A DNA stretch of 63,815 nucleotides, the filler included, from Octopus bimaculoides (lineage: Eukaryota), in assembly GCF_001194135.2 (NCBI RefSeq). It is 7 parts of 7 records of this genome, joined end to end, with 100 filler letters (N's around TTAATTAATTAA, not from the genome) between each part and the next. Parts side by side here need not be neighbours in the genome. Positions count along the whole stretch, not along the records: positions 40,739 to 46,791 come from NC_068988.1; 6 more parts are not named here. The stretch is one strand, 5' to 3'. The notes under the pieces are model-generated. The model worked only from the letters and a program-made list of their open reading frames with translations, had not been told where the DNA came from and did not search any database. Below, in pieces: positions 40,639-46,654 of the stretch (its first letter is position 1; the number at the start of each line of letters is the position of its first letter). The position numbers were made by a program, and so were the translations under genes.

Positions 40639-41159
40639 NNNNNNNNNNNNNNNNNNNNNNNNNNNNNNNNNNNNNNNNNNNNTTAATTAATTAANNNNNN
40701 NNNNNNNNNNNNNNNNNNNNNNNNNNNNNNNNNNNNNNATATATATATGAGTGTGAGTATGTATGCATATATACGTATGTGTATATACATGTGTGTGCAC
40801 ACACACACACACACACACACGCACACACACACACACACACTCGTGTATATTCATGTACAACACAGCATGAACCAGGACTGAAGTATAGGCTTTGCAATAT
40901 TTAAATTTGCGAGTTTGAGCGTATGTATGTACGTACGTACATACGTACGTACGTACGTATGTACGTATGTATGTATGTATGTACGTATGTTTGTACGTAT
41001 ATATGTATGTACATACGTACATATGTATGTATGTATATATGTATGTATGTATGTGTGCGTGTGTATGCGTATATGATGTAAGTATATTGTATGTTCATGA
41101 GAAACTTTAAACGTACCGGGTAACATAAACTAACAAAGGACTTATTCGTTTGAACAACT

Positions 41160-41343: not shown

Positions 41344-42415
41344 CTCGTCCATCGTAACATCATGACTAGCCAATATCCAACCCAGTCATTCGAACGTCAC
41401 TAACTTCTTGATGAAATGTATCTAATAATTAATTAAAGATAAGACTATCCTAATTAGCCTTAACATAGAATGAAGCAACAACAGAAACAATAAAACTGGA
41501 TCCATATCAATCCATAAATGTGCCGTAACCCACTAGGTGTACGAATGGGGATTCAATCAATAGTATGAACAACACACTGGAAACCGAACCAAAAGAGGCT
41601 CGGATACTGTAAAGTAACAACAATTTTAATCTAAACATAGATATCATACTATCAGCTAGCCTATTGGAACTCATCGTAATTTAGATACACACACACTTAT
41701 AAATATATGATACAAATAAGATGATAATTTTTTCGAACGCAGAAACGCCGTTATAACAGCAGAAATATTGAGTACCCTTACAATGCACAAAAATTTGTCA
41801 ACAAACGAAATTTGTCAAAGCACTCAGCCGATGTCTTTGAGGGGCGTAAGTTCAAGTCCCATGTCTGTTTCTTGACAAATTTTTTCGCTTTTTAAGAGTA
41901 ATTTACCCAATATTTCTGGGGAAATTTTTCGATAATATAATTCTTTATACTTTAAACTTTTTTTCCTTTTTCTTTTAATCAATTTATTTTTTGATACATT
42001 TCTTGTTTCCAATCGCGTTCTAAGTTGAAATGTCAAGTCATGCCTATAGTTATTTTTTAGTGTTGAGACACAGTCTAGTAACATTTTGTTGCACAGAAAA
42101 AAATTGATATTATTGAATTAATTTATACTTTACATTAACAAGATTAATATCATATAGAAATAAACTAGACATTGAACACGGTGCATAGTCACTGATGAAA
42201 TGCAAGCACATGTACTGAAACCATTCCAGTTGTTTCTTGTTTTTCTGTCCTTGAAAATATTCTTTATGCAGGCGAGTTGTTTACATCATTCGTGCATAGA
42301 ACGTTGGTTAAAAATCTATAGAAAAATTTTATAGCACAGGGCAATGAAACTGTTGAGCTATAAATCACACACGTACATACACACGCATATCCATAAATAC
42401 ACACACACACACACA

Positions 42416-42510
<95 letters not shown>

Positions 42511-42591
42511 ACACATATTTCAAAATGTAACCACATGTGAATCGTTGACTATTTTCTTCCTCCGTCTTTCCTTCTATTAGACTTACCTCTC

Positions 42592-42626
42592 TTTCCGAAG
42601 AAGAGCGTCTGCTCGAAATGTTAAAC
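42592..42626 (+). ncRNA. Degenerate Penelope-type hammerhead motif
   Basis: CCGAAGA A GAGC GTCT GCTC GAAA TGTTA; U4 replaced by C; helix I only about 2 bp. Confidence 0.4.
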
Positions 42627-42741
42627 CATGTTTCTTTCCTTCTCTGAGAGTCTGCTAATACTTTACATGTACTACGTCTTCGCGTTGTTGTTTTCTTTTC
42701 TGAGTTTGTTCTTTTTGGGATTTACTATATATATAAAATAT

Positions 42742-43195
42742 ATGTGACTGTCCTATAGAGGACGGTGTTACTGTTGTTTTTAGCCCCAGGAAGACATCTC
42801 CAGCTGGCCAACGACACACAGTCTGTGTCCGATTAGTATTTGCAAGGGAGGTCATCACTCCCATCTCTAGCCTTACATGATACACACAGACCCGGGTTTC
42901 TGGGTGGTTACCTGTCTTCAGTGTGTGTTAATCACTGGCTAGTGATAAAAACTCATCCCACTCGCAAAATACTTCATCATTTTTCAAGCAACACACTGTC
43001 GCTGATTTCGTAAAGAGAGAGATAAGTTATATTAAATCTCTGGGCAAGAAATAAACAGTAACCATGCAGAATCGTAAAATATATTTGCCAACTAAATGTG
43101 GAGGTCCTATAGAGGACGGTGTTACTGTGGTTTTTAGCCCCAAGAAGATATCTCCTCCAGCTGGCCAATGACACACAGTATGTGTCCGATTAGTA
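42742..43195 (-). mobile_element. Retrozyme-like repeat, subfamily 2, about 1.3 tandem units
   Basis: 42750-42839 is repeated at 43104-43195 (offset 354-357); one hammerhead lies between the repeats. Confidence 0.75.
42867..42942 (-). ncRNA. Type I hammerhead ribozyme with extended helix I
   Basis: Minus strand: CTAGCC AGTGAT TA ACACACA CTGAAGA CAGGT AACC ACCCA GAAAC CCGG GTC^TGTGTGT ATCAT GTAA GGCTAG; cleavage predicted between 42889 and 42888. Confidence 0.85.
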
Positions 43196-43224
43196 TATAT
43201 ATAATATGTATATATATAAATATA

Positions 43225-43260
<36 letters not shown>

Positions 43261-43270
43261 TGTATGTATG

Positions 43271-43329
<59 letters not shown>

Positions 43330-43355
43330 ATATGTATGTATGTATGTGTGCGTGC

Positions 43356-43437
<82 letters not shown>
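43195..43437. repeat. Compound (AT)n-(ATGT)n-(GT)n microsatellite
   Basis: Directly visible; truncates the upstream retrozyme unit. Confidence 0.95.
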
Positions 43438-43439
<2 letters not shown>

Positions 43440-43796
43440 ATAAAAGCGAAATTCTGTGTCTAGGACCCCTGTAGTTCAGTCTACATTTACTCTACATAGA
43501 CATATTATACCTTTTTGGAATTAGGACGATATCAGGATTGAAAATCTGTCCTTTATTTGATTCTTGAACATCCAGCATTGGGATCTGATTTAAAAGCATT
43601 TGGGCTGCTATTTCTAGCAGGTAAAGCGACCGTGAGAGGCACAAGAGTTATCTCCCTTAGCTTTAAGTTCTACTAAAGAATTTTGTGTTTTTTTTTTTTA
43701 ATCTTTTTCAGTCATTAGACTGCGGCCACGCTAGGACTCCGCTTTGAAGAATTTTAATCGAACAAATCGACACCAGTTCTTTCTTTTTTATGCCTG

Positions 43797-44232
43797 GTAC
43801 ATTGCACGACCTCTTCATAAATATTTTGTGGGTAGGCCGTGTACCACAGGACTTTAAGGGTGCCCCAATTCAACATCTTTATAAGAACAGAAGTGTATAT
43901 GATAATCATCGCGGGGTATCCCTTCTGTCTATTACTGGTAAGGCTTTTGCTCGACTCATTCTTGAAAGGATCACCAAACACGTCATAAATGACATCCATC
44001 CAGAAACACAGTACAGATTTCGCTCAGTCCGTGGCGCACTATCGACATGATCTTTTTCGTTCGTTAGGTCGTTGAAAAGGTACACGAGAAAAATCAGAAG
44101 CTGTATATAGTGGTGTCCGTTGAACTTTCTAAGGCCTTCGACACCTAACCGACAGGCGCTTTGGATAGTTCAGAAAAAGCTGTTGTTTGTTATCACCTCC
44201 TTTGATGAGGGAATGAAAGCTGCGGCGGGGAA
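43797..44232 (+). mobile_element. RTE-clade reverse transcriptase fragment
   Basis: VPQDFKGAPIQHLYKN...NHRGVSLLSITGKAFARLIL...PETQYRFR, then frameshifted DMIF and LSKAFDT. Confidence 0.85.
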
Positions 44233-44377
44233 TTTTAGCTTCTTTCGATATTACAAGTGGCATACAAGCATACGCGCGCGCACACACACATAGCGCGCAC
44301 ATGCATACACAGACACACACACACACAGACACACACACGGACACACACACACATATACATTCATATAAATATATATG

Positions 44378-44702
44378 ACGGACTCTTCCATCGAAGATGA
44401 CGTATGGGTGTTCAGCTGTTGCCGAACGACTTGCACAAATAATTTATTTATAGTGATCAAATGTCCGTGCTGCTCATTAGCTCACTCTCTACATCAAATC
44501 GACGTTTATATATTGCCTATATAAACGACTTTGCCCGAACAGGTGCATGGTGTTCCACACGTCAGGTGTCGAAATGATCCCAGAGCAATGTGAGATGAAG
44601 TATTTTGTTCTAGAACACAACGCGCCACCCGGTCTAGGATTCGAAACCACGATCTCGCGCTCGTGAGTGCAACACCCTAAGCGCTAAGCCATGTGCCCTC
44701 AC
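44378..44702 (-). mobile_element. tRNA-derived CORE-type SINE related to family D head
   Basis: Minus strand: GGGCACATGGCTTAGCGCTTAGGG (A box), GGTTTCGAATCC (B box), TTCTAGAACAAAATACTTCATCTCACATTGCTC. Confidence 0.7.
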
Positions 44703-45795
44703 TACATAGGGTATACATCCTCACACATACACACACACGCATACACACATACATACATAAATACATACATACATACATACATACATACATAATACAAATG
44801 ATATATGACCATATGCATGTATACATACATGTATATACATACCTACATCTACATGTATATATAGATGCATATCCGGGTACAGGACGTCAGAAAAATGAAC
44901 AGGAACATACATACATACATACATACATACATACATACATACATAATGGCTGCAAACTAGTGTTAGAGTATTGCTAACGTCAGATCGAAAGTCCCACACA
45001 TGCGAAGGCTACGACCAGCCATTTTTGTGATAGGTCTTTCTTTTCTTTTTAAACGATGCCTGTGCATGATGATTTTTTAAAAAAAATTTTTATAGTGGAT
45101 AAAGGATTTGCAAATTCAATCCTACTCTCTAAACAGGGACAACAAAGACTCGAAAAGAACTAGTCTACATCATGGAATATTGTCAGTGTCGCAGGTTTTC
45201 TCTAAGAGTTTCCCCTCTCCTAGAGAGAAGTTGTAACAACAACAGAGAGGCTTCTCACTCCCAGTGGGCCAACCGCGCGCCTGGACACCAACCCAGGTAT
45301 TTACCACAACCACACGCGCAGACATACTCACACACATACCATGCATACATGGAACTGTAAAGATATGTAAAACTTTCCAAAAGTTTAGCACATAAATACA
45401 TATGCATGCATCTAGACATAAAAACGCATCCATAAAACAAACATACAAATCTGCGCATACACTAACACCAAATACTGCACACACACACATATATGCACAA
45501 ATACCTAGATGATGTTGATAAAAGTTCCAATGAAGGAGCCTTGAATCTATGTTAGAGTCCGGCTCTTTCTCTATGGACAAGAAATACAGAAATGAAACTG
45601 ATTGATAACATACATACATACATANNNNNNNNNNNNNNNNNNNNNNNNNNNNNNNNNNNNNNNNNNNNNNNNNNNNNNNNNNNNNNNNNNNNNNNNNNNN
45701 NNNNNNNNNNNNNNNNNNNNNNNNNNNNNNNNNNNNNNNNNNNNNNNNNNNNNNNNNNNNNNNNNNNNNNNNNNNNNNNNNNNNNNNNNNNNNNN

Positions 45796-46060
45796 GACCC
45801 CAGGACTTATTCTTTGTAAGCCTAGTACTTATTCTATCGGCCTCTTTTTGCCGAACCGCTAAGTTACGGGGACGTAAACACACCACCATCGGTTGTCAAG
45901 CGATGTTGGGGGGACAAACACAGACACACAAACATATACACACACATATATATACATATATACGACGGGCTTCTTTCAGTTTCCGTCTACCAAATCCACT
46001 GACAAGGCTTTGGTCGGCCCGAGGCTATAGTAGAAGACACTTGCCCAAGGTGCCACACAT
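45796..46060 (-). mobile_element. SINE family B copy, young, CpG intact
   Basis: Near-consensus 3' region and core; head missing after GGTGCCACAC. Confidence 0.9.
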
Positions 46061-46654
46061 GCACTTTCAGGTAGCAGCCCAGCTATTTCTACACCCCCAG
46101 CACATACATACATGCATGCACATATACACACGAACACATACATATATACTACATGCATACATCCACTTTTTCAGGTAACATTGAAATACGGGCCTGTTAG
46201 AAATAACATCATGCTCTAATCTTTAACACATTCTATTGTGGTTTGCCCAGCATGACGTTCCATATTTTGCCGTTGTTTTGTTAGTTACTGTTTTCTCTTA
46301 GTATTTTCTCTTTGCATTCAGTAGATTATAGTGTTCTATATATATTTTTCTACAACAGCTGTACAACCCTCTCGTGCGTAGGTTATTTTCTCGCATTTTA
46401 AGTGGCTTCTCCGCTAGGTCAATTGATATGTCAAAGTCTAGCTTCCTCATTCTACATCAGTCAATGGCCATACATTCTTTATTGCTCCAGGTCCAGTTTT
46501 GCCAGCGACGTCACTTCACCAAGGCAGTAATAAATACCTTTGCTGTGTGTAAACGCAGCTGTGATTAACAACAAGCTCGCAAGTTCGCATCGCTTTAACT
46601 TCCTGTCCTGCCTAAATTTTAGGGTTTCTTGCTTGAACCGTGAAAGAAAGTTCA

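What the first reader, a model, noticed from the sequence alone, without database searches (positions are those of the whole stretch)
42742..43195. Tandem ~355-nt repeat carrying a complete type I hammerhead ribozyme (retrozyme-like element)
Seen: the minus strand 42942-42867 gives a full hammerhead. Helix I is ACACACA/TGTGTGT, extended by GTGAT/ATCAT and CTAGCC/GGCTAG; core CTGAAGA; helix II GGT/ACC; GAAAC; palindromic helix III ACCCGGGT; GTC cleavage triplet. About 90 nt downstream of the ribozyme also occur 354-357 nt upstream, so this is about 1.3 copies of one unit. Established: non-LTR retrozymes are short tandem repeats with type I hammerheads whose palindromic helix III allows dimeric folding; they are processed to monomer circular RNAs. 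Inference: this is an octopus retrozyme family. I cannot tell whether it is already catalogued.
Basis: partly seen in the sequence, partly recalled or inferred. Interest (0 to 1): 0.9.

Follow-up and report, generated by a model that had tools for sequence, protein, structure and literature searches.

The report
Decayed solo hammerhead retrozyme copy
This is one old, 1.3-unit insertion of a small hammerhead-ribozyme retroelement (a "retrozyme") in an octopus-like genome; the class is already known in molluscs, and this copy has one weakened ribozyme, so it is ordinary and probably dead.

Summary
On the minus strand, 42928-42882 carries a type I hammerhead: helix I ACACACA/UGUGUGU, CUGAAGA, GAAAC, the palindrome ACCCGGGU and GUC, with cleavage at 42889/42888. 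A 104-107-nt segment recurs at a 354-357-nt offset, so the insert (42736-43196) is 1.30 units.

"Complete" overstates it. Helix II is only GGU/ACC, and two non-pairs (C·A, A·C) separate it from the core, so the conserved 10.1-11.1 pair is missing. Rfam finds no hammerhead, even at E≤10. A model I built from four experimentally cleaving retrozyme hammerheads ranks the site first (18.2 bits, E~6e-4) but skips helix II.

The locus holds one ribozyme, not the two needed to release a circle. The insert sits in a (TA)n tract. Homology between the left flank and an Octopus vulgaris paralogue stops exactly at its edge.

Best reading: an old, 5'-truncated, longer-than-unit copy of a non-LTR retrozyme (a Penelope-like-element dependant), now inert.

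Whether a family exists could not be tested: no cephalopod genome was searchable, and 21.5 kb of O. vulgaris held no copy. New member of a known kind; low interest.

The parts
42736..43196 (-). Whole insert: 461 nt = 1.30 units of a 354-357-nt element, read 5'->3' from 43196 down to 42736
   Evidence: Self-homology begins at 42736 and ends at 43196. Homology of the left flank to an O. vulgaris paralogue stops at 42735.
43090..43196 (-). 5' partial unit (repeat copy, 107 nt). It is truncated about 50 nt downstream of where the preceding unit's cleavage site would lie, so it carries no ribozyme.
42840..43089 (-). Single-copy part of the unit (250 nt). It is non-coding and contains the hammerhead.
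   Evidence: No Pfam domain in any open frame. No protein relatives.
42736..42839 (-). 3' repeat copy (104 nt). Over the first 90 aligned columns it differs from the 5' copy by 6 substitutions and one 3-nt indel.
42867..42942 (-). Hammerhead with extended helix I: 7 bp, a UA bulge, 5 bp, an internal loop, then 6 bp
   Evidence: pair probabilities mostly >0.8; flank duplex -13.5 kcal/mol, lowest 2.8% of background.
42882..42928 (-). Hammerhead core region: helix I, CUGAAGA, helix II, GAAA, helix III, GUC, helix I
   Evidence: Descriptor scan. Covariance-model hit at 42883-42927, 18.2 bits.
42901..42914 (-). Defective helix II, CAGGU-AACC-ACCCA: C·A (42914/42901) and A·C (42913/42902), then G-C, G-C, U-A and loop AACC
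   Evidence: Sequence. Strict helix II = 0 bp. Hairpin -1.2 kcal/mol. Skipped by the model.
42890..42897 (-). Palindromic helix III, ACCCGGGU: 2 bp plus a CCGG loop in a monomer, 8 bp between two copies
   Evidence: the dimer cofold forms the 8-bp intermolecular helix.
42888..42889 (-). Predicted cleavage site, after C17 (42889) of the GUC triplet
   Evidence: Position in the motif. Not tested biochemically.
42726..42735 (.). Left half of the (TA)n target tract, which is the tail of the flanking repeat 42515-42735
43197..43233 (.). Right half of the TA-rich target tract, running into (TATG)n/(TG)n

Best explanation
The insert at 42736-43196 (minus strand) is one old retrotransposed copy of a small non-coding element of the non-LTR retrozyme kind. 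Such elements carry a type I hammerhead and are thought to be mobilised by Penelope-like elements (PLEs).

Inferred mechanism. A source array is transcribed into a multimeric RNA. The hammerheads, pairing in twos through the palindromic helix III, cut it into about 354-nt monomers, and a tRNA ligase circularises these. A retroelement reverse transcriptase/endonuclease nicks a (TA)n tract and primes on the AU-rich stretch of the RNA (…CAUAUAUUU). It copies more than one lap of the circle, or of an uncleaved multimer, and stops early. The result is 1.30 units with the cleavage junction intact in the middle.

What is shown: the motif, the 1.3-unit layout, the single ribozyme, the TA-tract flanks and the sharp left edge.

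What is inferred: the RNA circle, the mobilising enzyme, and the view that this copy is now inert. The last rests on three points. The copy has one ribozyme. Helix II has lost both core-proximal pairs. The two repeat copies have drifted about 7% apart. Both helix II mismatches are what CpG-to-CpA decay of a perfect CGGGU/ACCCG stem would leave; this too is inference.
For: - Motif: it is the only hammerhead-like site in 6 kb, with 0.0005 expected from shuffles. It is the top hit of a model trained on coral, mussel and axolotl retrozyme hammerheads: 18.2 bits, E~6e-4, next hit 8.5 bits. Helix III has the same form as the mussel ribozyme.
- Helix I extends to 18 bp.
- Unit: 354 nt, 42% G+C, no coding capacity, within the published retrozyme range.
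- Layout: 1.30 units, with the cleavage junction contiguous inside the insert.
- Insertion signature: TA-rich tracts on both sides. Flank homology to an O. vulgaris paralogue whose (TA)n tail is uninterrupted ends exactly at 42735.
- Literature: PLEs insert preferentially into (TA)n/(CA)n microsatellites and form partial tandems. Animal retrozymes are related to PLE terminal repeats, and solo monomers are common.
- Cephalopods do carry type I hammerheads: 235 Rfam loci in the giant squid.
Against: - No second copy of the unit was found anywhere I could search: the piece, 21.5 kb of O. vulgaris and 73 kb of other loci, viral, metagenome and prokaryote collections, and protein collections. No cephalopod genome was searchable, so this is absence of test rather than absence.
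- Rfam hammerhead models do not detect the site.
- Helix II lacks the conserved 10.1-11.1 pair.
- The 354-nt circle is not unusually stable: z = -1.7, with controls from -3.0 to +1.3.
- At the observed motif stringency, a genome of gigabase size would hold of the order of a hundred chance matches. The case therefore rests on the conjunction of motif, long helix I, unit repeat and insertion signature.
Confidence: 0.6

Rival explanations
1. It is the terminal part (pseudo-LTR region) of an autonomous Penelope-like element, inserted as a severely 5'-truncated partial tandem, rather than a copy of a short dedicated retrozyme.
For: PLEs carry type I hammerheads in their terminal repeats, insert as partial tandems, and prefer (TA)n/(CA)n microsatellites. 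Most PLE hammerheads in genomes occur as single motifs from truncated copies. Retrozymes and PLE terminal repeats are sister sequences, so the two readings overlap.
Against: The repeat closes on itself after 354 nt with no reverse-transcriptase or GIY-YIG coding sequence between the copies; a partial tandem of a 3-kb element would not do so. The only RT fragment nearby is LINE-type and lies on the opposite strand. The ribozyme has the 'canonical' metazoan geometry (helix I 7 bp, helix II 4-5 positions, helix III 2 bp plus a palindromic tetraloop). It does not have the PLE minimal form (helix II 7-8 bp, helix I 4-5 bp, little or no helix III).
Confidence: 0.2
2. It is a chance hammerhead-like motif. 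CA/TG-rich low-complexity sequence happens to give ACACACA…UGUGUGU around short core boxes, and the 104-nt duplication is an unrelated local event.
For: Helix I is made of microsatellite-like CA/TG repeats in a piece full of (CA)n. Helix II fails. Rfam gives no hit. The motif score (E~6e-4 per 6 kb; 0.0005 per 6 kb) extrapolates to of the order of a hundred chance hits per gigabase-sized genome. No other copy was seen.
Against: Several features not required by the descriptor coincide. Helix I has 11 further base pairs (lowest 2.8% of background). Helix III is a full 8-nt palindrome. GAAAC and GUC are exactly as in validated retrozyme ribozymes. The motif lies in a 1.3-unit repeat of retrozyme size, with sharp edges in a (TA)n tract.
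Confidence: 0.08
3. It is a functional ribozyme at this locus: it still self-cleaves (possibly in trans-dimers with transcripts of other copies) and processes a host or element transcript.
For: All 13 core nucleotides and the GUC triplet are intact. Natural retrozyme hammerheads with a mismatch at the base of helix II (axolotl, U·U) still cleave, mainly as dimers. The palindromic helix III can pair between two molecules.
Against: There are two consecutive non-pairs next to the core. Helix II pair probabilities are ~0.006 and helix III ~0; the hammerhead fold is -16.4 against an MFE of -23.6 kcal/mol. The locus has only one ribozyme and no partner in cis. The repeat copies have diverged about 7%, which indicates neutral decay.
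Confidence: 0.05

Closest known systems
Metazoan non-LTR retrozymes (Cervera & de la Pena 2020, PMC7229834), in particular the Mytilus galloprovincialis 350-390-bp repeats
   Same: Type I hammerhead. Unit of about 350 nt. G+C below 50%. Non-coding. Helix III of A-U and C-G closed by a palindromic tetraloop (mussel GCGC, here CCGG). Helix I of 6-7 bp. Longer-than-unit genomic copies. Both hosts are molluscs.
   Different: There are only 1.3 units and one ribozyme here. Helix II lacks the two core-proximal pairs (the mussel has GUCU/AGAC). No sequence similarity to the mussel unit was seen, and none is expected, because families are species-specific. Expression and circles are unknown.
Amphibian satellite 2 / axolotl retrozymes HHR_Amex1 and HHR_Amex2
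   Same: Weak helix III with a palindromic loop, which implies action as a dimer. HHR_Amex2 also has a non-pair (U·U) at the base of helix II. Units are 330-350 nt.
   Different: The axolotl motifs have one mismatch, not two. They are present in about 60,000 copies each and cleave in vitro. Nothing comparable is shown here.
Minimal hammerheads in the terminal repeats of Penelope-like elements (Cervera & de la Pena 2014, PMC4209133; Craig et al. 2021, PMC8557442)
   Same: Type I topology. Palindromic 15.2-16.2 region. Partial-tandem insertion. Microsatellite, (TA)n, targets. Many solo, decayed copies.
   Different: PLE motifs have a long helix II (7-8 bp) with a conserved G10.1-C11.1 pair, a short helix I (4-5 bp), and usually little or no helix III. 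They flank an RT/GIY-YIG reading frame. None of this is seen here.
Schistosoma Sm-alpha SINE-like hammerhead repeats
   Same: A short non-autonomous retroelement that carries a type I hammerhead.
   Different: Sm-alpha has a tRNA-like polymerase III head (my own knowledge). No tRNA-like structure or A/B boxes were found in this unit (and reading of the sequence).

Membership tests
Hammerhead ribozyme, type I | Conserved core: CUGANGA … GAAA … UH at the junction of three helices | tested here: met
   CUGAAGA 42921-42915, GAAA 42900-42897, U16.1 C17 at 42890-42889.
Hammerhead ribozyme, type I | Helix I open-ended (this defines type I) and at least 4-6 bp | tested here: met
   7 bp, extended to 18 bp with a bulge and an internal loop.
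Hammerhead ribozyme, type I | Helix II stacked directly on the core, closed by the conserved 10.1-11.1 pair (normally G-C), about 4 bp | tested here: not met
   C·A and A·C oppositions at 10.1/11.1 and 10.2/11.2. Strict helix II = 0 bp. The model skips helix II. Pair probabilities ~0.006.
Hammerhead ribozyme, type I | Short helix III with a palindromic loop (the metazoan canonical form) | tested here: met
   A-U and C-G plus CCGG; 8-bp palindrome ACCCGGGU; an intermolecular helix forms in the dimer cofold.
Hammerhead ribozyme, type I | Detected by the curated Rfam hammerhead covariance models | tested here: not met
   No hammerhead family was listed at E<=1 on 6 kb or at E<=10 on 461 nt.
Hammerhead ribozyme, type I | Self-cleavage at the predicted site | not testable with these tools
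   Needs in vitro transcription or RNA end mapping.
Non-LTR retrozyme (animal) | Short (about 170-400 bp, up to about 970 bp) non-coding unit of low G+C that carries a type I hammerhead | tested here: met
   354 nt, 42% G+C, no Pfam domain or protein relatives.
Non-LTR retrozyme (animal) | Head-to-tail tandem arrangement, with at least two consecutive units each carrying a hammerhead (the 'active' definition of Li et al. 2026) | tested here: not met
   1.30 units and a single hammerhead. This corresponds to their 'monomer/solo' class.
Non-LTR retrozyme (animal) | Multi-copy family in the genome, with conserved and covarying ribozyme | not testable with these tools
   No cephalopod genome collection was available. 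There was no copy in the 6-kb piece, in 21.5 kb of O. vulgaris or in four other loci. Scans of the viral, metagenome and prokaryote collections were empty.
Non-LTR retrozyme (animal) | Highly self-paired monomer RNA, expressed as linear and circular RNA | tested here: inconclusive
   Circular MFE -93.8 kcal/mol, 65% paired, z = -1.7, within the range of neighbouring controls. Expression could not be tested.
Non-LTR retrozyme (animal) | Insertion signature: sharp edges, target-site duplication when present | tested here: inconclusive
   The edges are sharp and lie in a (TA)n tract. An 18-nt TA-rich match on both sides is low-complexity, so a duplication cannot be proved.
Penelope-like element (terminal repeat) | Hammerhead-bearing direct repeats that flank an RT plus GIY-YIG reading frame on the same strand | tested here: not met
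   There is no such frame between or beside the repeats. The only RT fragment (43790-44240) is LINE-type and on the other strand.

The most novel reading that the evidence does not exclude
The unit belongs to a cephalopod-specific retrozyme family in which the unusual helix II is the family norm, not decay. That helix II would have either tandem A·C/C·A oppositions next to the core or a C10.1-G11.1 closing pair. The ribozyme would work only as a dimer, and the family would be expressed as abundant ~354-nt RNA circles in octopus tissues.
Probability: 0.1. Interest if true: 0.5.

Novelty: new member of a known kind. Interest (0 to 1): 0.25.

Why it matters
If a full family exists in Octopus, it would extend hammerhead retrozymes, and the small ribozyme-made RNA circles they produce, to cephalopods. 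The library I searched held only a bare count of Rfam hammerhead loci for cephalopods (giant squid). It would also add one more case of insertion into a (TA)n tract, which fits the proposed dependence on Penelope-like elements. This particular copy has one ribozyme with a broken helix II and is most likely a dead relic. On its own it answers no open question.

Tried and rejected
1. Rfam on the piece and on the 461-nt locus. No hammerhead hit. The many microRNA-like hits are microsatellite artefacts, and the sR36 hit (17 bits against a cut-off of 55) is noise.
2. Translating the ribozyme-sense frame of the unit and searching the protein collections, in the hope that repeat copies had been called as genes. 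The word-indexed search found nothing. The full HMMER search gave two hits, both long tandem-repeat proteins whose scores add up from weak repeated matches; they are not homologues.
3. Exact-pattern scans of the viral, metagenome and prokaryote-genome collections, using a conserved 22-25-mer of the repeat or a degenerate hammerhead pattern. All were empty.
4. Using the neighbouring LINE RT fragment to pull in octopus DNA. The 86-aa ORF found nothing. The frameshift-joined 140-aa version found 16 relatives, including one from O. vulgaris. Five loci (94 kb) were fetched. None holds the unit or a convincing hammerhead, but the O. vulgaris locus fixed the likely host and the left edge.
5. A rod-like circular fold as supporting evidence. 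The fold is not distinguishable from controls, so I dropped this argument.
6. A target-site duplication. Only TA-rich low-complexity matches were found, so I do not claim one.
7. A tRNA-like polymerase III head in the unit. None was found.

Full report
**Observation.** I read 42300-43700 and rebuilt the motif on the minus strand:

5'-CUAGCC A GUGAU UA ACACACA CUGAAGA CAGGUAACCACCCA GAAA CCCGGG UC | UGUGUGU AUCAU GUAA GGCUAG-3' (42942→42867)

Coordinates:
- Helix I: 42928-42922 pairs with 42888-42882.
- CUGAAGA: 42921-42915.
- Helix II region: 42914-42901.
- G12-A15.1: 42900-42897.
- Palindrome ACCCGGGU: 42897-42890.

Helices II and III are closed by loops and helix I is open, which makes the motif type I. 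The repeat is also real. Segment 42736-42839 matches 43090-43196 at 87.9% over 107 columns (E 3e-34), offset by 354-357 nt. The element spans 42736-43196, which is 461 nt or 1.30 units. TRF does not report it because there are fewer than two copies.

**Is it more than chance?** Three tests bear on this.
- My own descriptor asked for the core boxes, a helix III of at least 1 bp and a helix I of at least 4 bp. It finds exactly one site in the 6-kb piece on either strand. At the observed stringency (helix I 7 bp, relaxed helix II 3 bp, helix III 2 bp), 2000 dinucleotide-preserving shuffles give 0.0005 sites per piece.
- I built a covariance model from four hammerheads that were shown to cleave in Cervera & de la Pena 2020 (coral, mussel, two axolotl; sequences from their supplement; alignment and model). 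With filters off, the site is the best hit: 18.2 bits, E about 6e-4. The next hit scores 8.5 bits, E 0.45.
- The 20-nt flanks outside helix I form a further duplex of -13.5 kcal/mol, which only 2.8% of equally spaced segment pairs in the piece reach.

One caveat applies. At 5e-4 per 6 kb, a gigabase-sized genome would hold of the order of a hundred chance matches. The motif score alone is therefore not proof. The case rests on the motif together with the long helix I, the full palindrome, the unit repeat and the insertion signature.

**What is not right in the observation.** The ribozyme is not complete.
- After A9 come C and A, and before G12 come C and A. Positions 10.1/11.1 are therefore C·A, and 10.2/11.2 are A·C.
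- Only G-C, G-C and U-A follow, closed by AACC.
- My strict descriptor gives helix II 0 bp. The covariance model treats helix II as a local skip. The hairpin alone is worth -1.2 kcal/mol, and its pairs have a probability of ~0.006 in the ensemble.
- Rfam lists no hammerhead family at E≤1 on the piece or at E≤10 on the 461-nt locus.
- The literature calls the G10.1-C11.1 pair highly conserved. One mismatch at the base of helix II (axolotl HHR_Amex2, U·U) is tolerated, with weak monomer and good dimer cleavage.

Helix III has only 2 bp plus a CCGG loop in a monomer. Two copies can form an 8-bp intermolecular helix, as in the dimeric hammerheads of newts and axolotl. This locus holds a single hammerhead. 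The upstream partial unit starts about 50 nt 3' of where its cleavage site would have been.

**Context and edges.** The insert lies in microsatellite-rich DNA: (AC)n at 42399-42515, TA-rich tracts at 42726-42735 and 43197-43233, then (TATG)n/(TG)n to 43435.

A decayed LINE-type reverse-transcriptase fragment at about 43790-44240 (+) let me fetch related loci. One of them is 21.5 kb of Octopus vulgaris chromosome OX597815.1 (L001).
- Other repeats of the piece match L001 at up to 91.5% over 270 nt and 96% over 74 nt. The window therefore comes from Octopus or a close relative.
- The left flank 42515-42735 has a paralogue in L001 (75%) that ends in an uninterrupted (TA)n tail. The homology stops at 42735, one base before self-homology of the element starts at 42736.

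So the element was inserted into the (TA)n tail of an older repeat. A target-site duplication cannot be proved, because both sides are low-complexity TA.

**What it is and how it would work.** The unit (354 nt, 42% G+C, no domain in any frame, no protein relatives) fits the published description of animal non-LTR retrozymes:
- 170-400-nt, low-G+C, non-coding repeats with type I hammerheads;
- mussel units of 350-390 bp, whose ribozyme has the same helix III form, GAAAC-GCGC-GUC.

The cleavage junction is contiguous inside the insert, and neither end of the insert coincides with it. The template was therefore a re-ligated circle or an uncleaved multimer, not a cleaved linear monomer. The RNA-sense 3' end (…CACAUAUAUUU) abuts the (TA)n target, which suggests priming by microhomology on a nicked TA tract.

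Penelope-like elements prefer (TA)n/(CA)n targets and make partial tandems. A 2026 preprint argues that animal retrozymes derive from their terminal repeats and that solo monomers are common, non-mobile offspring. I infer the same pathway here; none of it is shown for this element.

The two repeat copies differ by 6 substitutions and a 3-nt indel over their first 90 aligned columns, so the copy is old. Both helix II defects are A residues that follow C. CpG-to-CpA decay of a perfect CGGGU/ACCCG stem would leave exactly these changes (hairpin -5.9 against -1.2 kcal/mol; local CpG observed/expected 0.66). This is inference and needs the family consensus.

**What I could not do.** No eukaryotic genome collection was available. 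Scans of the viral, metagenome and prokaryote collections were empty. Protein-level tricks failed. The 94 kb of fetched loci hold neither the unit nor a convincing hammerhead. Copy number, family consensus, covariation and expression are therefore untested. The predicted circular fold is not more stable than controls (z -1.7).

**Comparison and novelty.** In the held library, no paper describes octopus retrozymes. The giant squid genome paper counts 235 Rfam hammerhead-1 loci without further study. The class is well described in other molluscs and across animals. This is at most a new member of a known kind, and this copy is a decayed solo relic. Interest 0.25.

Noticed in passing
window 43790-44240 (+): A decayed, frameshifted LINE-type reverse-transcriptase fragment. 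RVT_1 scores 38 bits on the joined translation. The best relatives are 63-66% identical and include a 'Hypothetical predicted protein' of Octopus vulgaris. It lies on the opposite strand to the hammerhead and is unrelated to it.
   Followed up: partly
window 45796-46059; L001 12394-12661, 14854-15072, 3093-3320, 5498-5636, 14503-14576: A SINE-like repeat that starts right after the assembly gap. It has five copies within 21.5 kb of O. vulgaris chromosome OX597815.1, the best at 91.5% over 270 nt and 96% over 74 nt. This is the main evidence that the window is from Octopus or a near relative.
   Followed up: partly
window 42515-42735; L001 12739-12964: The left flank of the hammerhead element is itself an interspersed repeat that ends in a (TA)n tail. 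In the O. vulgaris paralogue (75% identity) that tail is uninterrupted and is followed directly by the SINE-like repeat.
   Followed up: partly
window ~44620-44700 (-): A tRNA-like polymerase III A-box and B-box pair (GGCTTAGCGCTTAGGG … GGTTTCGAATCC), suggesting the head of a tRNA-derived SINE. ARAGORN and Rfam do not call a tRNA.
   Followed up: no
window 45625-45795: A run of 171 N, which is an assembly gap inside the piece.
   Followed up: no
window 40743-41074, 43171-43363, 44710-44944, 46099-46168: Microsatellites, (GTAT)n, (CA)n and (TATG)n, give dozens of Rfam microRNA-family hits (mir-297, mir-466, mir-5014, mir-3149), all far below the gathering scores. They are low-complexity artefacts.
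   Followed up: yes
window 42820-42885 (-): A weak match to the archaeal C/D-box snoRNA family sR36 (17 bits, cut-off 55). It overlaps the 3' strand of helix I and the start of the repeat. I regard it as noise.
   Followed up: no
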